A DNA stretch of 64,000 nt from the IMG/VR virus record IMGVR_UViG_3300037264_008423, positions 174,437-238,436 of that record; one strand, written 5' to 3'. Both the position numbers and the translations under genes were made by a program. Below are positions 10,380 to 41,527 of the stretch, piece by piece. The notes under the pieces were generated by a model. The model saw only the letters and a program-made list of their open reading frames with translations. It had not been told where the DNA came from and did not search any database. Position 1 is the stretch's first letter. Every line of letters starts with the position of its first letter.

Positions 10380-10596
10380 GCCAATAAGCTGGGCGGTTGA
10401 TCGAGACTTCCGTCTGGCCGAACGCGGTTACGATCAGCCGGGGGAACCGGTAAAACCTACGGCTGTTGGGAGCGAGGCTTGCCGAGCAGCAGGCCGCTTT
10501 GGCAGTATTTCACGGCACCCAACGTGGGACGGCGGCAGGCCGGTCGTGCGGTCTGTAAACGCGACTCCGCCCGTCAGCGTAAAACAGGTGCCGTGT
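10380..10596 (+). ncRNA. Unidentified structured RNA
   Basis: Stems GGTTGATCG/CGATCAGCC, CACGGCACC/GGTGCCGTG, GGTCGTG/CGCGACT; no credible ORF. Confidence 0.45.
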
Positions 10597-10598
10597 TT

Positions 10599-10674
10599 AC
10601 GGCAGTAGCTCAATTAGCAGAGCGGCGGTCTCCAAAACCGTTGGTTGGGGGTGCGAGTCCTCCCTGCCGTGCCA
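10599..10674 (+). tRNA. tRNA-Trp(CCA)
   Basis: Acceptor ACGGCAG/CTGCCGT, loop CTCCAAA, GCCA end. Confidence 0.9.
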
Positions 10675-14369: not shown

Positions 14370-14440
14370 TGGCTTGTTGACTCCGGTGTGTCCGACCGTC
14401 GCTAAAGCGGCAGAAGCGGGTTCGATTCCCGCCAAGTCCA
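14370..14440 (+). pseudogene. Degenerate tRNA-like element, possible CTA anticodon
   Basis: Perfect T arm GCGGG-TTCGATT-CCCGC, partial acceptor, loop CGCTAAA; poor D arm, no CCA. Confidence 0.35.
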
Positions 14441-14557
14441 TCGCTTGCGGCACAAAGTGCGCAGTGCTGCCGTTTTCTGATTTAAGGCCGTGTCCGGCAA
14501 TTCGTGAGCCGGGCTAATCACTCGCGCTATCTTGGGCGGGGCGGCGCTTACTTTATA

Positions 14558-15388: not shown

Positions 15389-15599
15389 AAAAGATAGGGC
15401 CTCCCCGGCCTGGAACTAAATTTGTTTACCAAGGTATCGACTACCGTTTCCGGTCTTTCAGCGTTGAGTATCAGGTCTTAAAATTGGACCCGGACGAGCG
15501 CCTGATCCACCTAAGCCGCCGTAAGCGCATTACCTACGAGGCATGGCAGACCTTGATGACGCATTATAGGGCTGCGATTACTTTTGTTAGTTGAATTTT

Positions 15600-15673
15600 G
15601 ACGGGCCGATTGGCTGTGGGTTATCTTCACTTGAAATGAAGCGATACGTGTTCAACTCACGTCCGTGGCTCCA
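15600..15673 (+). pseudogene. Degenerate tRNA-like element (TGA loop, short variable region)
   Basis: CTTCA-CTTGAAA-TGAAG and ACGTG-TTCAACT-CACGT arms, CCA; acceptor poorly paired. Confidence 0.4.
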
Positions 15674-15732
15674 TGTGCCACGGCCTCGGAGGTAGCAAAA
15701 ATTCCACGCCGCCCCTTGTCCGTCAATTAAAT

Positions 15733-28774: not shown

Positions 28775-29204
28775 GGGGGCGTATTAGACTCGATCTAGTG
28801 CCCTGAACGCTTAGCGACAGCCGAGGATGGTGGTTGGACCTCGATAATACCTCCACCGAAAACATCAAATGCCGAAAGCACTGATGATACGGCTCTCTTA
28901 GCCCAAGCCGAAGCGATCTTCGCCGACCCGGATGAAGTCCTCGCCAAGACCGGCTATGCAGAGCCAGCTTTGGCCTAGCGCCAAACCGTCCACCCTCTGA
29001 CGCCTGCTACGGGGTGTGGGCGTAACCAGCAGGCAAAAACGCGGTCTCTTCCCGTGAACCGCGCCGTAGATCACGTGAGTGTGGCCGGGGTGATGTCTTG
29101 CCGTTCTCTTACCCGGTCATTCTAAATAAAGAAGCGGAGATGCCTGTGGATGCTCGCGCAAGGACTATTAGAGACAGGAGGGGCAGTGCCTCCTCGCCTC
29201 CACC
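28775..29204 (+). ncRNA. ssrA: tmRNA
   Basis: 5' GGGGGCGTATTAGACTCGA; 3' T arm plus CGCCTCC-ACCA with G3:U70; tag frame 28871-28978 after the CAAAT resume context. Confidence 0.92.
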
Positions 29205-29239
29205 AATTTCCGCCTCCACTGTTTACAGTTCTGTAATCC

Positions 29240-29854
29240 ATGAACGTGGCTCTGAACTGTAAACAGTGTGGTGATTCTTTCGAGATCCGAAAGGCCGAGC
29301 ATAACCGGCAGCTTAAAAAAGGCAGGCAGCACTTTTTCTGTAGCCTTTCCTGTTGCGCCGCTTATGGCAACACAGCAAGGATCGCACCAGTCATAAAGAA
29401 AAACTGTAAGCATTGCGGTGGAGAGTTTGAGACAAAACAGGATCGGCATGAAGCTGACTTTTGCGGTAAACGATGCGCTTCGCTGGGAAGCGTAACTGCG
29501 TATCGTCGAGCCAGAGCGAGGCTGTCGGGACAGGCGCATGCCAATAATTTTAGCAACGCTAAGGCGCTGCTTGGTAGAGAAAATAAGAAATATAGGCTGC
29601 TGATTCCTTTGCTGACCGAAAGACAGATTAGGTATGAGTTTGAAAAAAGGATCGATAAGTTTGTATTTGACTTGGCGCTCGAAGACCAGAGGGTTTTGAT
29701 CGAGTTTGACGGTCCAGAGCACCGCACGCCTAAAGGGACCGAGCGAGATGCGGTCAGGGACAGGTCCGCCGAGCTGCTGGGTTGGAAGGTTTTAAGGATA
29801 CCGGTGAAAACCGGTCAGATTATTCCAGCTTCCATGCTGGAAGCTGTTCTTTGA
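29240..29854 (+). CDS. DUF559/Vsr-like endonuclease with N-terminal Zn-binding repeats
   Basis: CKQC..FFCSLSC..CKHC; FVFDLALEDQRVLIEFDGPEH...RD...LGWKVLRI. Confidence 0.85.
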   Translation: MNVALNCKQCGDSFEIRKAEHNRQLKKGRQHFFCSLSCCAAYGNTARIAPVIKKNCKHCGGEFETKQDRHEADFCGKRCASLGSVTAYRRARARLSGQAHANNFSNAKALLGRENKKYRLLIPLLTERQIRYEFEKRIDKFVFDLALEDQRVLIEFDGPEHRTPKGTERDAVRDRSAELLGWKVLRIPVKTGQIIPASMLEAVL

Positions 29855-30098
29855 TAAATTTTGCGCCGGTCTGGCCAAGATCGTTCGTAGCGTTTGTGTA
29901 ACGGAACTTGTCTTTCATTCTCCAGACTGGCGCGATCTTTTTAATTTGACGGGTCGTTTGATGTCGGTTATCAGCACCAAAATCATAAGTTGGAAATTGT
30001 GGCGTAACAACCACCAGGGGCACCATCAGCTCACGCGCGTCGTGGTCTGAATTGCCCCTGAAGCTAAAATCAAAACGATGTCGCTTTTTATCCGTCAA
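29820..30098 (-). CDS. Hypothetical protein
   Basis: 92-aa ORF filling the gap. Confidence 0.45.
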   Translation of the reverse strand: MTDKKRHRFDFSFRGNSDHDARELMVPLVVVTPQFPTYDFGADNRHQTTRQIKKIAPVWRMKDKFRYTNATNDLGQTGAKFIKEQLPAWKLE

Positions 30099-30106
30099 AA
30101 CTTTTT

Positions 30107-30268
30107 AGCGCGCGAACCGCGCGGGTCGAATGTGATTGGTTACCATCAAACCGTTGGTTATTGGTGCAAATCCAATCCGGTCCGCAAGGGCCGGTAGCTC
30201 AATCAGCAGAGCAGCGGTTCCCGTAAGGGATTTCCGATCCTGAGCCTTACCCGTGCGGTTCGCGCGCT
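30107..30268 (+). ncRNA. yrlA: YrlA-type Y RNA (circularly permuted tRNA-like domain plus Ro60-binding stem)
   Basis: 19-bp terminal stem; GTCGAATG with bulged C opposite TTACC; T arm, GCAA-closed acceptor, D arm; about 0.8 kb from Ro60. Confidence 0.88.
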
Positions 30269-30313
30269 CATTTTGGTTCTACAGTGGAGATTAAAAGTAA
30301 ACAAAGCAAAACT

Positions 30314-30880
30314 ATGCTCGATAAAAATAATATCCTCTCTGTGGTGCAAGCCAACCTGTTTGAACCAGTTAACGACGCTAACCGCGAGGCTACCCGGCAG
30401 CGCATCGCTTCCGGTTTGAATCTCGGCCCGGACAAAGTGCTCCTGGGCCGTGAGGCCATCACGATCATTGATGATCAGGAAGTTCATCAGGTCCAGATCG
30501 GCACGGATGGTCAAGCCGTGCTCCTGGGAAACGCCATCGACCGCGCTCTCGGCTTCCTCAACGATCTGTTCAACTGCGACCCCATCGCGATCTGGCTGGC
30601 TTGCTGCAACCGTATTCCGATCAGTGAGAGGGTGAGCCGGGAAAATGTCATGCAGCCGGTGAGCCACGTCCGCGCCGACGGCACGTCTTACTCCCTCAGC
30701 GGTTTGGACCTGGTGAACGGCGTGCTGGCCGCCATGACGGGCAGATACCTGGAAATTGATTTCGTGAAGCCCGAGGAGGGCCGTCCGCCGACCGCGATGA
30801 AGGGCTTTAAAATTCACAGGGAGGCCCTCCAGTCTTCTGAGCCTGCCGCAAATTTAGGCGGCGAGTCCCATACCGATTAG
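30314..30880 (+). CDS. Hypothetical protein between the Y RNAs
   Basis: ORF of about 190 aa. Confidence 0.7.
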   Translation: MLDKNNILSVVQANLFEPVNDANREATRQRIASGLNLGPDKVLLGREAITIIDDQEVHQVQIGTDGQAVLLGNAIDRALGFLNDLFNCDPIAIWLACCNRIPISERVSRENVMQPVSHVRADGTSYSLSGLDLVNGVLAAMTGRYLEIDFVKPEEGRPPTAMKGFKIHREALQSSEPAANLGGESHTD

Positions 30881-30891
30881 CTGCTTTTGAT

Positions 30892-30985
30892 GCCACGAGC
30901 CGAACAGGACCGCGCCCTTGAGTGAGGGGGCTGTCGATGTTTCATGGCGCGCTTCCCGCGCCGTCCAACTTGCTCGTTGCCGTTA
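30892..30985 (+). ncRNA. Second Y RNA candidate (non-tRNA-like)
   Basis: ACGAGC-C-GA pairs with TT-GCTCGT; followed by terminator and Ro60. Confidence 0.7.
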
Positions 30986-30992
30986 GAAAGTC

Positions 30993-31015
30993 AGGCCGCA
31001 CGCAGCGGCCTTTTT
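30993..31015 (+). terminator. Rho-independent terminator after the Y RNA candidate
   Basis: AGGCCGC-ACGCA-GCGGCCT then TTTT. Confidence 0.6.
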
Positions 31016-31058
31016 GCTGCCACATGGTTGGGGGCAGACTGCGCTGAAAGGAAAAACC

Positions 31059-32708
31059 ATGAGTGTTTACCAGACGGTTAGCCGTAAGGCAACCCCGCAA
31101 AATCAACCCATTCCCGGTTCCAAGCAGGTGAAGAACTCCGCAGGTGGTTACACCTGGCTCCTGGATGACTGGAGCCGCCTGCGCCGATTCCTGGTGCTTG
31201 GCTCCCAGGGTGGAACGTATTACGTCAAGGAACAGGATCTCGTCAAGGCCAACGCGGAAGTGGTTGACCGGTGCTTGGGTCTTGACGCGGCCAGGACGAT
31301 TCAGCAAATCGTGGAAGTTTCGGATAAGGGCCTGGCCTATCGCAACGAGGCGGCGCTCTTCGCGCTGGCCAAGGCCGCCGCCGACCAGAATGAAAAGTCA
31401 CGAGCGTTGGCTCTTGACGCGCTGCCGCAAGTGGCGCGCACCGGCACCCACCTGTTTCACTGGGCAAACTATGTTCAGTCGATGCGGGGCTGGGGCCGCG
31501 CCCTGAGAAAGGCGGTCGGGCACTGGTATAACCAGTGGACGGCGGACGAGCTGGCCTACCAGGTCGTCAAGTATCAGCAGCGCGATGGCTGGTCCCACCG
31601 GGACCTGCTCCGCCTGGCGCACCCGGTCGCCGAGACCGAGGGGCACGACGCGGTATTCCGCTGGGTCCTGGGCGGCCAGGAGGCCCTGGCGGCGCGCACG
31701 GTGAAGCGCCAGCGTCCCGGTCAAGAGGTAAAGCCTGAATACACCTACCCGGATCTGGCTTTCCACCTGCCGCAGTTCATCGAGATCTTTGAAAAGGCCA
31801 AGACGGCGGACGCCAAGACGCTTGTCAAGCTGATCACCGAGCGCAGCCTGCCCCGCGAGGCGATCCCCACGGAGCAGTTGAACTGCCCGGAGGTTTGGGA
31901 GGCGCTCTTAGTCAACATGCCAGCCACGGCCCTGGTCCGCAACCTGGGCAAGATGACCAGCATCGGGCTGGTCAAGACGCTTTCCAAGGCGTCCAAGACC
32001 ATTGTGGACAAGCTGGGTAACGCCGCGTGGCTCAAGAAGTCCCGCGTCCACCCGATGCAGTTTTTGATCGCGGCCAAGGTGTATGCCCAGGGTCACGGGG
32101 AAAAGGGCAAGCTCGCCTGGACGCCGGATCAGTCGGTGGTCTCGGCCCTGGAGCGCGCCTTCTACGCCTCTTTTGGCAACGTCAAGCCCATCGGCAACAA
32201 CGTGCTGATCTCGCTGGATATCTCCAGTTCGATGGGACATACGATGGAAGGCACCTGCTTGTCCTGCTACGAGGCGGAAGCGGCCCTGGCGCTAATCCAT
32301 GTCAGCATTGAGGACACCGTGGGGGTCATGGGTTTCGCCACAAACTACCGGGAAATCAAGATCCGCAAGGGCATGAGCCTGGTGGACGCGATGCAGCACG
32401 TCGCCGGTCAGGGCTTCGGCGGCACGGACTGCTCGCTGCCGTTTCGCTGGGCGGGAACGGAGCGGATGGATGTGAACTCATTTATCACGGTCACGGACAA
32501 TGAATCATGGCACGGCGGTGTTCACCCGTCCCAGGCGCTCAACGCCTATCGCCAGGCTTCCGGCAATCAGGCCCGGTCGGTCGTCATGGGCATGACGAGC
32601 ACGGGCTTTACTATCGCGGACCCCAATGACGCGGGTTCGCTCGACGTGGTGGGCTTTGACGCCTCCGCGCCTGCGCTCATCTCGGATTTCTGCCGGGGTG
32701 ATGTCTAA
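31059..32708 (+). CDS. rsr: Ro60/TROVE ribonucleoprotein (Rsr)
   Basis: NSAGGY..LRRFLVLGSQGGTYY; ARTGTHLF; KYQQRDGWSHRDLLRLAHP; vWA DISSSM, GGTDCSLP, TDNESW, VVGFD. Confidence 0.97.
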   Translation: MSVYQTVSRKATPQNQPIPGSKQVKNSAGGYTWLLDDWSRLRRFLVLGSQGGTYYVKEQDLVKANAEVVDRCLGLDAARTIQQIVEVSDKGLAYRNEAALFALAKAAADQNEKSRALALDALPQVARTGTHLFHWANYVQSMRGWGRALRKAVGHWYNQWTADELAYQVVKYQQRDGWSHRDLLRLAHPVAETEGHDAVFRWVLGGQEALAARTVKRQRPGQEVKPEYTYPDLAFHLPQFIEIFEKAKTADAKTLVKLITERSLPREAIPTEQLNCPEVWEALLVNMPATALVRNLGKMTSIGLVKTLSKASKTIVDKLGNAAWLKKSRVHPMQFLIAAKVYAQGHGEKGKLAWTPDQSVVSALERAFYASFGNVKPIGNNVLISLDISSSMGHTMEGTCLSCYEAEAALALIHVSIEDTVGVMGFATNYREIKIRKGMSLVDAMQHVAGQGFGGTDCSLPFRWAGTERMDVNSFITVTDNESWHGGVHPSQALNAYRQASGNQARSVVMGMTSTGFTIADPNDAGSLDVVGFDASAPALISDFCRGDV

Positions 32709-33285
32709 TTCACGGAACCGCGCCCTGGGTGACCGGGACGCGGTTCTACTCTTTACTATGGGTGCTAATCGTCACTGTGTGATTGACTGTTTCGAGTTTG
32801 AGCCAGATAGCAATATCGTGGAAATTGGAACCGATCAGGGCGGGGGTTCCACTCGATTTTTGGCGGACTACGCGCGAGCGCGCCGTTTGAATTTTTGGAC
32901 CGTGGACATCAATCCCCAGCGCATTGATCAGGCCGCCCGGCTGGGCTGCCACGCGGTTTGCGCCAAGGGGGAGGATTTTCTGATCGACTTTGGCAGGCCG
33001 ATTCACTTTGCCTATCTGGACAATCTGGACTGGATGGGCGGCGGCATGGAGGTCCCCGCCAACGTGGCCAGCGCCCAGGCTCACCTGCTTCAAGCGCGGC
33101 GTTTGCTCCAATGGATGACAGCGGGGGTCATCGTCATTGATGATACCTGGCTTAGCCAGGGATTTGGCAAGGGTTATTACGCCGCTCAATTTCTGGCTGA
33201 TTCCGGTTTTACGGTGGAATCGGGACCCGGCTGGCTGGTCCTGGTTCGGAGCATGGCCGCTGGCCGCCGTCTATCGGAAAAGTAA
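32701..33285 (+). CDS. Class I SAM-dependent methyltransferase
   Basis: IVEIGT..GGGST..WTVDIN..FAYLD..VIVIDD; start overlaps Ro60 stop. Confidence 0.82.
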   Translation: MSNSRNRALGDRDAVLLFTMGANRHCVIDCFEFEPDSNIVEIGTDQGGGSTRFLADYARARRLNFWTVDINPQRIDQAARLGCHAVCAKGEDFLIDFGRPIHFAYLDNLDWMGGGMEVPANVASAQAHLLQARRLLQWMTAGVIVIDDTWLSQGFGKGYYAAQFLADSGFTVESGPGWLVLVRSMAAGRRLSEK

Positions 33286-35993: not shown

Positions 35994-36076
35994 GGCGCGT
36001 GGTTTACCCGGAACAGCAGACGGGCCTGGTCGAGAACCAGTGAGCCTTGGAAGTGCAATTCTTCTCGCGCCCACCA
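35993..36076 (+). tRNA. tRNA-Leu(GAG), non-canonical core, C33
   Basis: GGGCGCG/CGCGCCC, loop TCGAGAA. Confidence 0.82.
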
Positions 36077-36083
36077 TTTTTAA

Positions 36084-36159
36084 GCTGACGTAACTCAATT
36101 GGCAGAGTAACGGACTTTTAATCCGTAAGTTACGGGATCGTGGCCCGTCGTCAGCACCA
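36084..36159 (+). tRNA. tRNA-Lys(TTT)
   Basis: ACGGA-CTTTTAA-TCCGT arm, ACCA end. Confidence 0.9.
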
Positions 36160-36334: not shown

Positions 36335-37099
36335 GTGAAACCAAAACTACATGAACTCCTGGCGGCGGAGACGAACCTGGACAACCAGGCGAATAAGTGC
36401 CGCACTGACTTGGTGGACACCCTGACCAAGAAACGGCACCACTTTGAGGAAAAAAAGACGGTGTTTATCCCGAATACGGAAGGCGCGACGCCGATGGTGG
36501 AAGCGCAGTCCGACATCGTGACCACCGTGCGCAAGGAGCTGGACTGGATCAAGGGCCATCTCACCAAAGCTTTGGACGCCGCGTTCCAGATTGCGGAGAC
36601 CAACATGGTCGCGCGCGGCGACGTGGTGATCGATGATGACGCGGCGACGGTTCTGCTCACGGGGATTCCAGCCACGGCGCTCCTGGAACTGGAAAAGCGC
36701 GCCGTTGAGATCAAGCAGCTAGTCGAGGCGATCCCCACGCTGGACCCCGCCAAAGGTTTCCAGTCCGACGAACAGCGGGGCGATGGATTCTTCAAGGCCA
36801 GGGACGTGGCGAAAACGCGCACCAAGAAAGAGAAGAAAGTCATCGTGCTCCACGCGCCGACCAAAGAGCATCCGGCCCAGGTGCAGTTGATCGATGTGGA
36901 TGTGCCGGTGGGCGCTTTGCAGGAGCAGGAATGGTCCAGCCTGATCACCACCGCCCAAAAAGCGGACATGCTGGATCGGGCAGAGAAAGTGGTTCGCGCG
37001 CTCAAGAAAGCGCGCTCGCGTGCCAATGACACGGAAGTGGACACGACCAAGAAGCTGGGCAACCGGCTGCTGAGCTACGTGTTTGATGGAAAAGTGTAA
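36335..37099 (+). CDS. Conserved hypothetical coiled-coil protein
   Basis: KLHELLAAE...IPATALLELEKR...IPTLDP..HPAQV; GTG start. Confidence 0.85.
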   Translation: MKPKLHELLAAETNLDNQANKCRTDLVDTLTKKRHHFEEKKTVFIPNTEGATPMVEAQSDIVTTVRKELDWIKGHLTKALDAAFQIAETNMVARGDVVIDDDAATVLLTGIPATALLELEKRAVEIKQLVEAIPTLDPAKGFQSDEQRGDGFFKARDVAKTRTKKEKKVIVLHAPTKEHPAQVQLIDVDVPVGALQEQEWSSLITTAQKADMLDRAEKVVRALKKARSRANDTEVDTTKKLGNRLLSYVFDGKV

Positions 37100-37210
37100 A
37101 CAATTTCGGGTGTGGAAAGCGGCCTCCGGGTTGCTTTCCTAGCTCAAAGCTCAAGGTGAAGCTCAGATTCAGGGTTACAGGTCAGGCTATCACCCGAAGG
37201 CTCAAAACCC

Positions 37211-37376
37211 TAAGCGAAAGGAACGTTGAAAGGTAGCGCCACTCCAACTGAGGTCGGGGGTTCAAATCCCTCCTCCGCCCCCAAAATCATATGGCGGAGT
37301 AGCTCAGCGGTAGAGCATCAGGATCAGGCTAACGGCGCTAAGCGTTTTGACGAACAGAGCTAAAAAGCTTCGCTTA
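37211..37376 (+). ncRNA. Second YrlA-like circularly permuted tRNA-like RNA
   Basis: T arm, then CTCCGCC-loop-GGCGGAG acceptor, then D arm; closed by CTGA/TCAG, TAGCGCC/GGCGCTA, TAAGCGAA/TTCGCTTA. Confidence 0.75.
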
Positions 37377-37432
37377 ATAAAACCAAGGGCCACTCGCGTG
37401 GAAGCGGGTGGCCCCCATTATTTCAAAGTTCT

Positions 37433-37783: not shown

Positions 37784-38389
37784 ATGTCTATGAAGAGCAT
37801 ACTCCAAGAGGAAGTCCTGGTCTTGAACCGGGGCTGGCAGGCGATTGACACTACCGATGTCGCCACGGCGCTGTGCGATTTATTTCGGGGCGTGGCCACG
37901 GCCATTGATACCGGTAACGAGGATAGCGGCATGCAGGCGGTCACCCTTGAAGAGTGGCTGACCCTGCCGATTCGACCCGCTCGGCCAGGGCACGCGGCGG
38001 ACAAGTGGATTGGCACGGTGCGCAGCAAAGTGCGCGTGCCCACGGTGATCGTAAAGGCCAGCTACAGCGACATCCCCAAAAGACGGCCCAAGCTGGATAA
38101 CCGGGGCATCCGCGACCGCGACCGCTGCCGGTGCCAGGTCACTGGCGATCTCTGCCCGGACGGCTCGGTGGATCACCTGGTTCCTCGCAGCCGGGGCGGC
38201 GCGAAGAAGTCCTGGACCAACATGGTCTGGATGCGCCGCGACCTGAATGGCAAAAAGGGCGACCGCACGCTGGAGGAAATGGGCTGGAAACTGCGCCGAC
38301 CGCCCAAGGAGCCAATGGCTGTTCCGGTGAGTATCACGATTCGTCGGCGCGAGGATAAGCCTGACTGGAATCATTTCTTGATTCACTAA
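37784..38389 (+). CDS. HNH endonuclease (McrA-like)
   Basis: VLVLN...VPTVI...RDRDRCRCQVTG..SVDHLVPRSRGG..SWTNMV. Confidence 0.9.
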   Translation: MSMKSILQEEVLVLNRGWQAIDTTDVATALCDLFRGVATAIDTGNEDSGMQAVTLEEWLTLPIRPARPGHAADKWIGTVRSKVRVPTVIVKASYSDIPKRRPKLDNRGIRDRDRCRCQVTGDLCPDGSVDHLVPRSRGGAKKSWTNMVWMRRDLNGKKGDRTLEEMGWKLRRPPKEPMAVPVSITIRRREDKPDWNHFLIH

Positions 38390-39961: not shown

Positions 39962-40804
39962 CTAAGCCGGAGGAGGCTTACAGAAACCTCCAAATGCTTG
40001 AGGATGCGCCGGTGCCGCGAGAACAGGCGTCTTGTCCACCTGTATCCCGTCTTTTAGCAGCCCTTCCCGGTCCGAATAGAAGATCTCCAGTGTAGCCAGG
40101 ACCAGTCCCCGCTGAAAATAAGCCTGAGTGACGCAATCGGTCGCCGCCGATCCGTAGCCAGTGCCCAGGTTGAAGTCTGGCGCGCTACAGCAGGCGTTGA
40201 ACGCTTGCGCAGGTGTATGTTTGCTGGAAGTAAGGCATCTCTCTACCGGGGTGCCGAGGGTCTCCTCCAGACTAGCGGTCAGTCCTTGGCTGGCACAGGT
40301 GGTGTATTCTTTGAAGATCGAGGGCTTGGCTGTAGGCCAGTCATAGGGCAAGACCGGCGTTACGAGGACTGGCGCAGGCGGCTGCTCGGCATACACCAGC
40401 ACACCGATTACTCCGCAATTCTGTTGTCCTTGGGTTTTACCCGCGTAGCTGCCGCTGCGGTCGGTAAACTCAAACTGGCGAACTTCGGTCATGGAAGTCC
40501 GCCAGCCCCGCACAGTAAGCGAGCTGTAGCCTTGGACCACGTAGCCTGACGAGTTGCCGTGGGCGGGTTGGCCCTCCACTGTGCTCAGGCCATCCACGCT
40601 GGGAACCACCAGGACGCGCTCCGGTCGGTTATTGCGGAATTTGATTTGATAGTAGTGGCCTTTTCTACCGGCCACGTAAGTGAGACCCTTGTGCCCGTAT
40701 TCGGGGATGCGGCTGCCATTAACCTCAACGGACAGCTCGAAGCCATTAACAAACATAGGAACCTTTCTATTGCCGCTTCGCGGACTTTTAACGCCCGGCA
40801 TCAT
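39962..40804 (-). CDS. Conserved hypothetical protein
   Basis: FELSVEVNG..YVAG..YQIKFRNN..SVDGL..GVIGV. Confidence 0.8.
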   Translation of the reverse strand: MMPGVKSPRSGNRKVPMFVNGFELSVEVNGSRIPEYGHKGLTYVAGRKGHYYQIKFRNNRPERVLVVPSVDGLSTVEGQPAHGNSSGYVVQGYSSLTVRGWRTSMTEVRQFEFTDRSGSYAGKTQGQQNCGVIGVLVYAEQPPAPVLVTPVLPYDWPTAKPSIFKEYTTCASQGLTASLEETLGTPVERCLTSSKHTPAQAFNACCSAPDFNLGTGYGSAATDCVTQAYFQRGLVLATLEIFYSDREGLLKDGIQVDKTPVLAAPAHPQAFGGFCKPPPA

Positions 40805-40927
40805 TGCCGGACTGATTTAGCTACTCCCGATAGAACTTTTCCACGTGGAACTTTTTTTGTTTACATTTTATATCCAATTCGCTACGTTGAGCGATATTTA
40901 TCGATACGGTTTAAAAACGAACAATTT

Positions 40928-41527
40928 ATGCCTAAGCTGGGTGATAAAATTCACGGCTGCTGGTTCGAGTGCCTTGTCTGTCGAAAAGCATTCTGGCGAG
41001 TAAACGCTTGGTTGAGAAAGTCAGGCAATCCCAAAACTTGTAGTTTGGAATGCAGGAAGCGTTTTTTAAGTGGAATAATTGGGCAAGAAGACGAGATTCT
41101 CTCGGATTACAGGTCTGGAAGCAGTCTTACACGCCTATGTGAAAGCTACCGGTCAGATAATAAAACACTGCGTGATTTTCTCGTTAGAAACGGAGAATTT
41201 GTGAGACCTAATGGGTTTTATCAAGAGGGGTCGCGCAACAAGAACTGGAAAGGCGGACACATCACAAAAGAGGGTTATCGGCGCATTGGGCACCGCTTTG
41301 AGCACCGGATTGTCATGGAGCAGATCATCGGTAGGAAATTATTAAGAAATGAACACGTTCACCACCTTAACGGTATTAAGCTCGATAATCGTCCAGAAAA
41401 TCTGGCTTTACACTCACCACACGCGCACGGAGAACTTCATGCGAAACAATTCAGAGATTTGCAAGAAATGTATTATGCTCGGATTCGTTTTCTTGAGCAT
41501 AGACTTCAAAGTATCGGGCAGCAGTGA
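40928..41527 (+). CDS. HNH homing endonuclease
   Basis: NKNWKGG..YR..EHRIVMEQIIGRKL...VHHLNGIKLDNRPENL; AT-rich. Confidence 0.9.
   Translation: MPKLGDKIHGCWFECLVCRKAFWRVNAWLRKSGNPKTCSLECRKRFLSGIIGQEDEILSDYRSGSSLTRLCESYRSDNKTLRDFLVRNGEFVRPNGFYQEGSRNKNWKGGHITKEGYRRIGHRFEHRIVMEQIIGRKLLRNEHVHHLNGIKLDNRPENLALHSPHAHGELHAKQFRDLQEMYYARIRFLEHRLQSIGQQ

What the first reader, a model, noticed from the sequence alone, without database searches (positions are those of the whole stretch)
30107..30268. Textbook YrlA Y RNA 0.8 kb upstream of Ro60
Terminal 19-bp stem (30108-30126/30249-30267). GTCGAATG matches GNCGAAN0-1G with the bulged C. It is followed by a T arm (30160-30176), an acceptor stem closed by a GCAA tetraloop (30177-30194), a D arm (30197-30212) and an anticodon-equivalent stem AACCGT/GCGGTT. 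This is the circular permutation that defines YrlA, and tRNA finders would miss or mis-call it.
Basis: partly seen in the sequence, partly recalled or inferred. Interest (0 to 1): 0.8.

Follow-up and report, generated by a model that had tools for sequence, protein, structure and literature searches.

The report
Phage YrlA-type Y RNA beside Ro60
A giant phage from sediment carries, just upstream of its Ro60 gene, a ~160-nt gene for a Y RNA with a built-in tRNA look-alike; it is a new member of a known RNA family, and standard annotation tools miss it.

Summary
Ro60 (Pfam TROVE plus vWA_Ro60) starts 790 nt downstream on the same strand.

The interpretation, a YrlA-class Y RNA, is supported. Rfam's YrlA model matches only the tRNA-like core (33.5 bits; gathering score 69). 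The element upstream of Ro60 in Bixzunavirus mycobacteriophages scores the same way (36.1 bits). A covariance model built here from seven homologues in related giant phages finds full-length copies beside Ro60 in many phage and bacterial loci. Of 214 matches, 212 lie on the Ro60 strand. All nine helices covary, and the tRNA Levitt pair 15:48 is kept in 28 of 28 sequences.

"Textbook" is too strong. This RNA has a 12-bp stem extension, an extra hairpin and an A18/G55 elbow variant.

Neither expression nor Ro60 binding was shown.

Novelty: new member of a known kind.

The most interesting by-product concerns the stem module, including a near-invariant GG-UUAYC. It lines up with animal Y RNA and nematode sbRNA consensus sequences.

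The parts
30107..30268 (+). Whole predicted Y RNA (YrlA class), about 162 nt from the base of the terminal stem to its end
   Evidence: Sequence; fold z = -7.3; R1 covariance-model match at 30119-30256, 140.7 bits
30107..30126 (+). 5' strand of the terminal (lower) stem. 30119-30126 is the conserved core; 30107-30118 is a GC-rich extension found only in the window, L002 and L004
   Evidence: Alignment A2 and pair table. Core pairs covary across 28 sequences. The extension shows compensatory changes among its three carriers
30125..30132 (+). GUCGAAUG, the GNCGAAN0-1G Ro60-binding motif. C30127 is bulged, followed by G30128.U30248 and A30129-U30247
   Evidence: Sequence; motif definition from PMC4201824. 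The pair before the bulge is U-A in 11 and C-G in 15 of 28 sequences. The G.U after the bulge is kept in 27 of 28
30132..30139 (+). 5' strand of the second (upper) helix P2, pairing with 30234-30240; U30133 is bulged
   Evidence: RNAalifold. Helix 3: all 6 pairs show changes on both sides, 95% of cells paired
30140..30144 (+). Unpaired UUACC, one instance of the UUAYC motif that follows the GG closing P2
   Evidence: UUAYC in 27 of 28 phage sequences and 127 of 144 bacterial matches
30149..30154 (+). 5' strand of the anticodon-like stem, pairing with 30214-30219
   Evidence: Helix 4: all 5 pairs show changes on both sides
30155..30159 (+). Variable-loop equivalent UGGUU. U30159 is position 48 of the Levitt pair, with A30202 at position 15
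   Evidence: The 15:48 pair is G:C in 19 and A:U in 9 of 28, with no exception
30160..30176 (+). T arm: 5-bp stem and 7-nt loop UGCAAAU, with G at position 55 instead of U
   Evidence: Rfam YrlA alignment; helix 5; loop table
30177..30194 (+). Acceptor-like hairpin: 7 bp closed by the GCAA tetraloop
   Evidence: Sequence. Helices 6 and 7: all 7 pairs show changes on both sides. Sequence and length vary freely among homologues
30195..30213 (+). U8-A9 equivalent (30195-30196), D arm (30197-30212; loop AAUCAGCA with A18 G19) and A26 equivalent (30213)
   Evidence: Rfam YrlA alignment; helix 8; loop table
30214..30219 (+). 3' strand of the anticodon-like stem
   Evidence: helix 4
30220..30229 (+). 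Accessory hairpin CCC-GUAA-GGG on the 3' side. Present in the close relatives and some others, absent in many
   Evidence: Helix 9 (13-15 of 28 sequences have gaps there)
30234..30240 (+). 3' strand of helix P2
30247..30268 (+). 3' strand of the Ro60-binding helix and terminal stem (UUACCCGU...)
30269..30276 (+). CAUUUUGG U-tract directly after the stem; stem plus tract resembles an intrinsic terminator
   Evidence: Terminator-like sites at 30252-30267 followed by CTCATTTTGG. A U-rich tract follows the stem in five of the six homologues whose downstream flank was printed, but not in L004
31059..32708 (+). Ro60 (TROVE plus vWA) gene, the presumed protein partner
   Evidence: Pfam. P0001, 549 aa, 100% identical. 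PDB matches: Ro60 9nen 1.9e-113, 1yvp 1.8e-112, Rsr 2nvo 1.2e-104

Best explanation
Window 30107-30268 (+) encodes a non-coding Y RNA of the YrlA class. It belongs to the Ro60 gene of a roughly 238-kb phage contig.

Inferred mechanism, from the known biology of Ro60 and Y RNA:
1. The conserved lower helix (GCGGGU / ACCCGU), with its bulged C and the following G.U pair, docks on the outer surface of the phage Ro60 ring.
2. The permuted tRNA-like module folds into a tRNA-like L shape. Its order is anticodon-like stem, variable loop, T arm, closed acceptor hairpin, D arm.
3. This module serves as the effector arm. It tethers the Ro60 ring to a host tRNA-binding or RNA-decay factor, most likely the 3'-5' exoribonuclease PNPase. 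It also gates access to the Ro60 cavity.
4. In this way the phage could redirect or dampen host decay of structured RNA during infection.
5. The terminal stem followed by UCAUUUU probably also ends transcription.

Shown here: the anatomy, conservation next to Ro60 on the Ro60 strand, covariation of every helix and of the Levitt pair, and homology to elements upstream of Ro60 in mycobacteriophages and Gordonia phages.

Inferred only: transcription, Ro60 binding, and the identity of the effector.
For: Anatomy and fold.

Rfam YrlA is the best family for the region: E 1.7e-5 on 601 nt and 0.0018 on the whole window.

Synteny: the order tmRNA, YrlA-like RNA, small MLDK... ORF (shown in three relatives), Ro60 holds in six related giant-phage loci whose Ro60 is 63-74% identical.

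Model R1:
- 70 matches in phage loci, all on the Ro60 strand, mostly within 1 kb of Ro60.
- 144 matches in 80 bacterial Ro60 loci, 142 on the Ro60 strand.

Covariation on 28 sequences:
- 93.9% of cells are paired, against 67% in shuffles and 38-47% when partners are slid.
- 37 of 43 pairs have changes on both sides.

Tertiary structure: the Levitt pair is kept in 28 of 28. The window and L010 share A18 together with G55. L090:5077 has U19 with A56.

R1 also matches elements just upstream of Ro60 in Mycobacterium phage McWolfish and Gordonia phage Cashline.

Precedents:
- YrlA in 254 bacteria and 22 phages (PMC4201824).
- tRNA-like crystal structure of YrlA (bioRxiv 10.1101/312249).
- Thermus phage phiLo Ro60 binds two phage Y-like RNAs and host PNPase (PMC12135203).
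Against: - Rfam YrlA reaches only 33.5 bits against a gathering score of 69, and does not align the stem.
- There is no evidence of transcription. The one metatranscriptome with matching words has a contig only at 30475-30665 and none over the RNA. Contigs can show presence but not absence.
- No sigma-70-like promoter was found on the + strand upstream.
- U55 is replaced by G, so the pseudouridine-55 modification seen in Salmonella YrlA cannot occur here.
- One close relative (L009) lacks the RNA between its tmRNA and the small ORF.
- The covariation counts come from an alignment fitted to the model, which leans towards the structure.
- The PNPase link is by analogy only.
Confidence: 0.85

Rival explanations
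1. It is a tRNA-related artefact: two degenerate tandem tRNA genes, a permuted or split tRNA gene, or a tRNA pseudogene in this tRNA-rich island. The T arm of one and the D arm of the next would mimic YrlA.
For: The window holds 23 tRNA genes and a tmRNA. Chen et al. warn that dimeric tRNAs can score as YrlA. R1 gives weak matches of 25-29 bits; two of them end inside tRNA genes, 36019-36149 in tRNA-Lys and 10533-10669 in tRNA-Trp.
Against: ARAGORN and Rfam tRNA call nothing at 30107-30268. Only an 18-nt closed hairpin separates the T and D arms, leaving no room for two acceptor ends, and there is no anticodon loop. The flanking stem with GNCGAA and a bulged C is conserved and covaries. Homologues sit beside Ro60 in loci without tRNA arrays.
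Confidence: 0.03
2. It is a tRNA mimic that acts without Ro60. For example, it could be a decoy for host tRNA-targeting defence nucleases or tRNA-modifying enzymes, with the stem serving only as a terminator or stabiliser.
For: The phage invests heavily in tRNAs and a tmRNA. A second tRNA-like RNA without a clear Ro motif lies at about 37.2 kb. YrlA is a substrate of tRNA enzymes (PMC4201824).
Against: The GNCG motif, the bulged C and the G.U pair are the most conserved part outside the tRNA core (G.U kept in 27 of 28). The linkage to Ro60 in position and strand is near-absolute across phages and bacteria.
Confidence: 0.07
3. It is a cis-acting leader or terminator that controls read-through into the downstream ORF and Ro60, not a stable trans-acting RNA.
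For: The terminal stem is followed by a U-tract 46 nt before the next ORF. No promoter of its own was detected.
Against: In other phages homologues lie downstream of Ro60 (L041, L040, L075, L045). In other loci they occur as 2-4 tandem copies. Conservation of a tRNA-like tertiary structure is not expected of a terminator.
Confidence: 0.03
4. It is a small ribozyme or a group II intron fragment. Rfam reports Twister-sister at 22.6 bits (E 0.021) and group-II-D1D4-4 at 15.4 bits (E 0.45).
For: Weak Rfam matches.
Against: Both are far below their gathering scores (34 and 49). They reuse the T arm and the acceptor hairpin. The alternative fold is not needed to explain the covariation, which fits the tRNA-like structure.
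Confidence: 0.01

Closest known systems
YrlA (Y RNA-like A) of Salmonella Typhimurium, Mycobacterium smegmatis and other bacteria; Rfam RF02553; tRNA-like domain structure PDB 6cu1
   Same: It is encoded next to Ro60 on the same strand. It has the GNCGAAN0-1G motif near the 5' end. The order of the permuted tRNA-like module is the same: anticodon-like stem, variable loop, T arm, closed acceptor hairpin, UA, D arm. The Levitt pair covaries. The 7-bp acceptor stem matches that of M. smegmatis YrlA.
   Different: The Rfam model aligns only the core (33.5 bits). Both strands of the Ro60-binding helix are recognisable here, whereas Chen et al. say only the 5' strand is recognisable in Salmonella and M. 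smegmatis. This RNA also has a second helix followed by UUAYC, an extra 3' hairpin, a 12-bp stem extension, and A18/G55 instead of G18/U55.
Element upstream of Ro60 in Bixzunavirus (Bxz1-like) mycobacteriophages, where phage YrlA was first reported (phage ET08 in PMC4201824)
   Same: It matches R1 over its full length (L092 3706-3849, 33.3 bits, E 2.8e-6). It has the same architecture, including CGGUUACC, lies immediately upstream of Ro60, and shows the same sub-threshold Rfam behaviour.
   Different: The sequence is distant. The acceptor hairpin is longer. The accessory hairpin is absent. That McWolfish's element equals the published ET08 YrlA is my inference from genus membership, not a direct comparison.
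Yrl1 and Yrl2 of Thermus phage phiLo, with phiRo60 and host PNPase (PMC12135203; PDB 9kop, 9l5y)
   Same: These are phage-encoded Y-like RNAs upstream of a phage Ro60, with a CGAA motif needed for binding. They give an experimental model for how a phage Ro60-Y RNA particle can engage host PNPase.
   Different: The phiLo Ro60 is only distantly related to the window's Ro60 (E 1.8e-11, against about 1e-113 for animal Ro60). No tRNA-like module is mentioned for Yrl1 or Yrl2 (zero occurrences of 'tRNA-like' in the text).
Metazoan Y RNAs (Rfam RF00019) and nematode stem-bulge RNAs (RF01656)
   Same: They share the order of the stem module: lower stem, bulged C, CGA, short internal loop, upper stem ending in GG, then UUAUC. 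In a verrucomicrobial homologue, RF00019 aligns end to end with both strands in register, and RF01656 aligns including UGGGUUAUCAU.
   Different: The loop is replaced by a tRNA-like module. The Rfam matches are weak (13.5 bits, E 5.5; 19.8 bits, E 0.11). None was reported for the window's own RNA at E up to 10.

Membership tests
YrlA-class bacterial/phage Y RNA (Chen et al. 2014) | Encoded within 4 kb of a Ro60 (TROVE) gene, on the same strand | tested here: met
   The RNA ends at 30268. Ro60 spans 31059-32708 on the + strand.
YrlA-class bacterial/phage Y RNA (Chen et al. 2014) | GNCGAAN0-1G motif near the 5' end | tested here: met
   GUCGAAUG at 30125-30132. Motif definition in PMC4201824.
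YrlA-class bacterial/phage Y RNA (Chen et al. 2014) | Conserved T-like and D-like stem-loops, separated by an acceptor-like stem-loop, in the order T, AS, D | tested here: met
   T arm 30160-30176, acceptor-like stem 30177-30194, D arm 30197-30212. They align to Rfam YrlA positions 23-85, and all helices covary.
YrlA-class bacterial/phage Y RNA (Chen et al. 2014) | tRNA-like tertiary signature: Levitt pair 15:48 kept by compensatory change, U8-A9 linker, D-loop GG with T-loop UUC | tested here: inconclusive
   The Levitt pair is A:U here and is kept in 28 of 28 homologues. The UA linker is present. The D-loop has A18 G19 and the T-loop has G55 instead of U55. L010 shows the same A18/G55 combination, which suggests a compensated contact, but this is not proven.
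YrlA-class bacterial/phage Y RNA (Chen et al. 2014) | Bound by the Ro60/Rsr protein in vivo | not testable with these tools
   This needs co-immunoprecipitation or a gel-shift assay.
YrlA-class bacterial/phage Y RNA (Chen et al. 2014) | Expressed as a discrete small RNA | tested here: inconclusive
   One metatranscriptome run has a 191-nt contig at 30475-30665 but nothing over the RNA. Contigs show presence, not absence.
Rfam RF02553 (YrlA) as curated | Score at or above the gathering threshold of 69 bits | tested here: not met
   33.5 bits, local match to positions 23-85 only. None of the Ro60-linked elements I scanned with Rfam reached 69 bits: the best was 43.2, and the Bixzunavirus element scored 36.1.
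Metazoan Y RNA (Rfam RF00019) | Match to the family model | tested here: not met
   No match at E up to 10 on window 29900-30500. Only a weak end-to-end alignment was seen in a bacterial homologue (13.5 bits, E 5.5).
tRNA | Cloverleaf with an anticodon arm and free acceptor ends | tested here: not met
   There is no ARAGORN or Rfam tRNA call at the locus. The acceptor is a closed hairpin and there is no anticodon loop.

The most novel reading that the evidence does not exclude
The whole Ro60-binding stem module may be one ancient unit shared between the phage and bacterial YrlA-class RNAs found here and animal Y RNAs and nematode sbRNAs. The module runs: lower stem, bulged C, G.U pair, upper stem ending in GG, then an unpaired UUAYC. 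On this reading the tRNA-like module sits where the animal loop is.

That would contradict the published view that bacterial Y RNAs are 'not homologous with' vertebrate Y RNAs (PMC4726728). It would also give the UUAUC motif a role older than DNA replication in animals, probably in the Ro60 particle. In the literature UUAUC is known only from vertebrate Y RNAs and sbRNAs, where it is tied to DNA-replication activity.

Evidence:
- UUAYC occurs in 27 of 28 phage and 127 of 144 bacterial copies.
- Rfam Y_RNA and sbRNA alignments to a verrucomicrobial copy line up.
- The human Y4 5' 31-mer scores 11.6 bits against an HMM of the bacterial and phage 5' strands. The part after GNCG scores 8.6 bits. 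In both cases 0 of 3000 shuffles reach that score.

Caveats:
- The comparison was made after the resemblance was noticed.
- The HMM input was selected on the presence of UUAYC.
- The Rfam E-values are weak.
- Convergence under a shared Ro60 constraint would look the same.
- I could not read the main reviews to check whether this has been described. No paper in the searchable library contains both 'UUAUC' and 'YrlA'.
Probability: 0.35. Interest if true: 0.65.

Novelty: new member of a known kind. Interest (0 to 1): 0.35.

Why it matters
Taken alone, this adds one more phage to the list of those carrying a Ro60 / Y RNA pair. It is useful for annotation but not surprising.

Three points go a little further:

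1. Annotation gap. None of the Ro60-linked copies I scanned with Rfam reached the family's gathering threshold. In 202 mycobacteriophage records the element carries no RNA feature among those listed for it. The listed rows show either none or 'hypothetical protein'.

2. A conserved cassette. Six related giant phages keep the RNA between a tmRNA gene and Ro60, in a large tRNA island. Three of them also show the small ORF that starts MLDK.... This suggests the particle belongs to a phage toolkit for RNA quality control or host takeover. Work on Thermus phage phiLo shows that such a particle can engage host PNPase.

3. Possible link to animal Y RNAs. The stem module resembles animal Y RNAs down to the UUAUC motif. 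If confirmed, this bears on the origin of Y RNAs and on what that motif does.

Tried and rejected
- Near-identity DNA search of 29000-33000 against 50,697 phage records: no match. The phage is not a deposited one. IMG/VR holds the contig itself (IMGVR_UViG_3300037264_008423, 238,436 bp).
- Rfam at gathering thresholds: only tRNAs and the tmRNA.
- Supplementary alignments and tables of Chen et al. 2014 are not held. I could not run their second covariance model or compare directly with their phage list.
- Two reviews (PMC10870794, PMC6542706) are not held.
- RNA evidence: one metatranscriptome run shares 13% of the words of 29900-31100. When laid on the window it covers 30475-30665 exactly, plus divergent pieces of Ro60, but not the RNA. 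This neither supports nor refutes expression.
- Promoter scan: no + strand sigma-70-like site upstream of the RNA. Co-transcription with upstream RNA genes followed by processing remains possible. In L007 the RNA starts about 10 nt after the tmRNA's CCA end.
- The ORF between the RNA and Ro60 (30314-30880, 188 aa) has no Pfam or PHROG family and no useful ESM Atlas lead; the best score was 0.47. Its N-terminal part (MLDK...) is conserved in the relatives.
- Sinorhizobium phage Phosso has the best deposited phage Ro60 match (47% identity), but R1 finds nothing near its Ro60 at E up to 1.
- The Twister-sister and group II intron matches were treated as chance.
- R1 matches at 36019-36149, 10533-10669 and 15599-15725 (25-29 bits) were set aside as probable tRNA-derived false positives. 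The first two end inside tRNA genes; the third overlaps only a weak Rfam tRNA match.

Full report
**What is there**

The window is part of IMG/VR contig IMGVR_UViG_3300037264_008423 (238,436 bp). No near-identical phage is deposited. The window is an RNA-gene island with 23 tRNA genes and a tmRNA at 28775-29205.

The ORF ending at 32708 is a Ro60 protein. It matches Pfam TROVE (2.5e-47) and vWA_Ro60 (2.2e-53). The product on record is 549 aa, starting at 31059. It resembles solved animal and Deinococcus Ro60 structures at E of 1e-113 to 1e-104.

**Checking the observation**

- The terminal stem 30108-30126 / 30249-30267 has 19 pairs, one of them G.U (30121.30254). A30107-U30268 adds a 20th pair.
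- GUCGAAUG at 30125-30132 fits GNCGAAN0-1G, the motif Chen et al. describe near the 5' end of YrlA RNAs (PMC4201824).
- C30127 is left unpaired between U30126-A30249 and G30128.U30248.
- The remaining elements are the T arm (30160-30176), the 7-bp acceptor hairpin with a GCAA loop (30177-30194), UA (30195-30196), the D arm (30197-30212) and the anticodon-like stem (30149-30154 / 30214-30219).
- The + strand folds much better than shuffles (z = -7.3).
- tRNA finders call nothing here.

- a second helix, 30132-30139 / 30234-30240;
- the unpaired UUACC at 30140-30144;
- a small hairpin at 30220-29 (30220-30229).

Rfam YrlA (RF02553) is the best-scoring family. It reaches only 33.5 bits against a gathering score of 69, and it aligns only model positions 23-85, the T / acceptor / D core.

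I do not take this as a refutation. No Ro60-linked element that I scanned with Rfam reached the threshold; the best scored 43.2 bits. The element directly upstream of Ro60 in the Bixzunavirus mycobacteriophage McWolfish behaves the same way (36.1 bits, positions 23-87). Bxz1-like phages are the group in which phage YrlA was first reported (ET08 in Fig. 1D of PMC4201824). That McWolfish's element is the published one is my inference from genus membership.

**Relatives**

Ro60 proteins 61-74% identical to the window's lie on other large contigs. I fetched seven of these loci.

- In six of them the RNA is present between a tmRNA gene and Ro60. A small ORF starting MLDK... follows it in the window and in the three relatives where I translated it.
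- L009 lacks the RNA.
- Only in the window does a DUF559/HNH-like endonuclease ORF (29240-29854) sit between the tmRNA and the RNA.
- In L010 the N of GNCGAA and its partner change together, U-A to C-G.

I built a covariance model, R1, from the seven sequences.

- In 87 phage sources R1 gave 70 matches at E below 0.01, all on the Ro60 strand. Most lie within 0.6 kb upstream or 1 kb downstream of Ro60, and they are often in tandem pairs.
- In 80 bacterial Ro60 loci, mostly Verrucomicrobiota MAGs with Ro60 47-54% identical, R1 gave 144 matches. Of these, 142 are on the Ro60 strand, typically as 2-4 tandem copies upstream.
- R1 also matches two tandem copies upstream of Ro60 in Gordonia phage Cashline and one in McWolfish.

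**Structure**

On the 28 best phage sequences, 93.9% of cells form standard pairs. This compares with 67% in shuffles and 38-47% when partners are slid by 1-3 columns. Thirty-seven of 43 pairs show changes on both sides, and all nine helices contribute. The alignment was fitted to the model, so these counts lean towards the structure, but the margin is large.

- The pair just before the bulged C is U-A in 11 and C-G in 15 sequences.
- The G.U pair after the bulge is kept in 27 of 28.
- The tRNA Levitt pair 15:48 is G:C in 19 and A:U in 9, with no exception. Chen et al. and the YrlA crystal-structure paper both highlight this feature.
- The window's T-loop reads UGCAAAU (G55) and its D-loop reads AAUCAGCA (A18 G19). 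L010 has the same combination, while the nearest relatives of both have G18 with U55.
- L090:5077 has A56 together with U19.

These look like compensated elbow contacts. They are only a few cases, and I did not test them further.

**How it most likely works**

By analogy with characterised systems, the lower helix with its bulged C binds the outside of the Ro60 ring. The tRNA-shaped module is the effector arm.

- In Deinococcus and Salmonella, Y RNA tethers Ro60 to PNPase (PMC4201824).
- In Thermus phage phiLo, the phage Ro60 and two phage Y-like RNAs bind host PNPase and slow it in vitro (PMC12135203).

I therefore favour a phage Ro60-Y RNA particle that engages a host RNA-decay or tRNA-binding factor.

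The terminal stem is followed by UCAUUUU here. U-rich tracts follow it in five of the six homologues whose downstream flank I read, but not in L004, so it probably also terminates transcription. The 12-bp GC-rich extension occurs only in the window, L002 and L004, and it shows compensatory changes among them.

Transcription, Ro60 binding and the identity of the effector are all inferred. The only RNA run with matching words covers 30475-30665 but not the RNA.

**Rivals**

- A tandem- or permuted-tRNA artefact is excluded by the closed 18-nt acceptor hairpin, the missing anticodon loop and the conserved Ro-type stem.
- A Ro60-independent tRNA decoy is hard to square with the near-absolute linkage to Ro60.
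- A pure terminator or leader does not explain copies downstream of Ro60, tandem copies, or the tRNA-like tertiary signature.
- The ribozyme and intron matches are weak and reuse the tRNA-like helices.

**Comparison and novelty**

This is a new member of a known kind, a YrlA-class Y RNA in a giant phage. It differs from the Salmonella type in five ways:
- both strands of the Ro60-binding helix are recognisable;
- it has a second helix followed by UUAYC;
- it has an accessory hairpin;
- its stem is extended;
- it carries the A18/G55 variant.

**A by-product worth a second look**

Directly after the second helix, GG-UUAYC occurs in 27 of 28 phage and 127 of 144 bacterial copies. A typical verrucomicrobial 5' strand reads GAUGGGCCGAAGUUGUGGGUUAUCG. 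The human Y4 5' end printed in PMC7012775 reads GGCUGGUCCGAUGGUAGUGGGUUAUCAGAAC.

- On a Limisphaerales locus, Rfam's animal Y_RNA model aligns end to end with both stem strands in register. The tRNA-like module appears as a 76-nt insertion (13.5 bits, E 5.5).
- On the same locus a nematode sbRNA model aligns through UGGGUUAUCAU (19.8 bits, E 0.11).
- An HMM of the bacterial and phage 5' strands scores the Y4 31-mer at 11.6 bits, a score that 0 of 3000 shuffles reach. The part after GNCG scores 8.6 bits, again with 0 of 3000.
- UUAUC is described as conserved in sbRNAs and vertebrate Y RNAs and as needed for sbRNA replication activity. The same review calls bacterial Y RNAs not homologous to vertebrate ones (PMC4726728).
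- No paper in the searchable library contains both 'UUAUC' and 'YrlA'.

The comparison was made after I noticed the resemblance, the HMM input was selected on the motif, and the Rfam E-values are weak. This is a lead, not a result.

**Verdict**

Interest is modest. The call is solid at the sequence level and untested at the bench.

Noticed in passing
window 37211-37375, with a terminator-like hairpin at about 37386-37414: There is a second, larger tRNA-like RNA 4.5 kb downstream of Ro60, just after a DUF7873 gene (36335-37099). Rfam YrlA scores it 36.6 bits over the full model at 37233-37344, better than the finding itself. It has T, acceptor and D arms inside a long stem, and no clear GNCGAA motif. 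Orthologues lie at L004 9102-9254 and L002 8393-8550, also after DUF7873. TCAGGCTA occurs as a direct repeat on both sides of the core (37182-37189 and 37324-37331).
   Followed up: partly
window 30140-30144; alignments A4 and A6; L113 4216-4400: GG-UUAYC after the second helix is near-invariant in the phage and bacterial copies. The whole stem module lines up with the animal Y RNA and nematode sbRNA consensus sequences.
   Followed up: partly
window 30166 and 30205; L010 3483-3620: The T-loop has G55 together with D-loop A18 in the window and in L010 only. Their nearest relatives have U55 with G18. L090:5077-5206 has A56 with U19. These are possible compensated tRNA-elbow contacts.
   Followed up: partly
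L092 3706-3849 (Mycobacterium phage McWolfish) and 201 other records: The YrlA-class element upstream of Ro60 is at least 90% identical in all 202 mycobacteriophage records (at least 95% in 200). No listed record gives it an RNA feature. Most listed rows show one or two 'hypothetical protein' genes over it, the rest none.
   Followed up: partly
L094-L173 (bacterial Ro60 loci, mostly Verrucomicrobiota MAGs): There are 2-4 tandem YrlA-class copies directly upstream of Ro60 in many loci. The nearest cellular Ro60 proteins to the phage's are verrucomicrobial (50-54% identity), a possible hint to the host or to the gene's origin.
   Followed up: partly
window 29240-29854: A DUF559 / HNH-endonuclease-like ORF lies between the tmRNA and the Y RNA. 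In L007, by contrast, the Y RNA starts about 10 nt after the tmRNA. More HNH-like ORFs lie at 37784-38389 and 40559-41527. These look like homing-endonuclease insertions in the RNA island.
   Followed up: no
window 30314-30880; L010 3642-3845; L006 3625-3846; L002 3329-3823: A conserved ORF of unknown function, starting MLDK(K/N/Q) or MLSKD, always sits between the Y RNA and Ro60. It is 67-73 aa in some relatives and 164-188 aa in L002 and the window. It has no Pfam, PHROG or Atlas lead.
   Followed up: partly
window 14370-14494: Weak YrlA (27.8 bits) and tmRNA (22.1 bits) matches fall on a T-arm-containing stretch between two tRNA-Arg genes. This may be a tRNA-like fragment or a third mimic.
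   Followed up: no
L009 3489-3637: One close relative (Ro60 63% identical) has the tmRNA, the small ORF and Ro60, but no Y RNA between them and no R1 match elsewhere in the 9.6 kb fetched.
   Followed up: no
window 28775-29205: Rfam finds a full-length tmRNA (55.2 bits), but ARAGORN does not report it.
   Followed up: no
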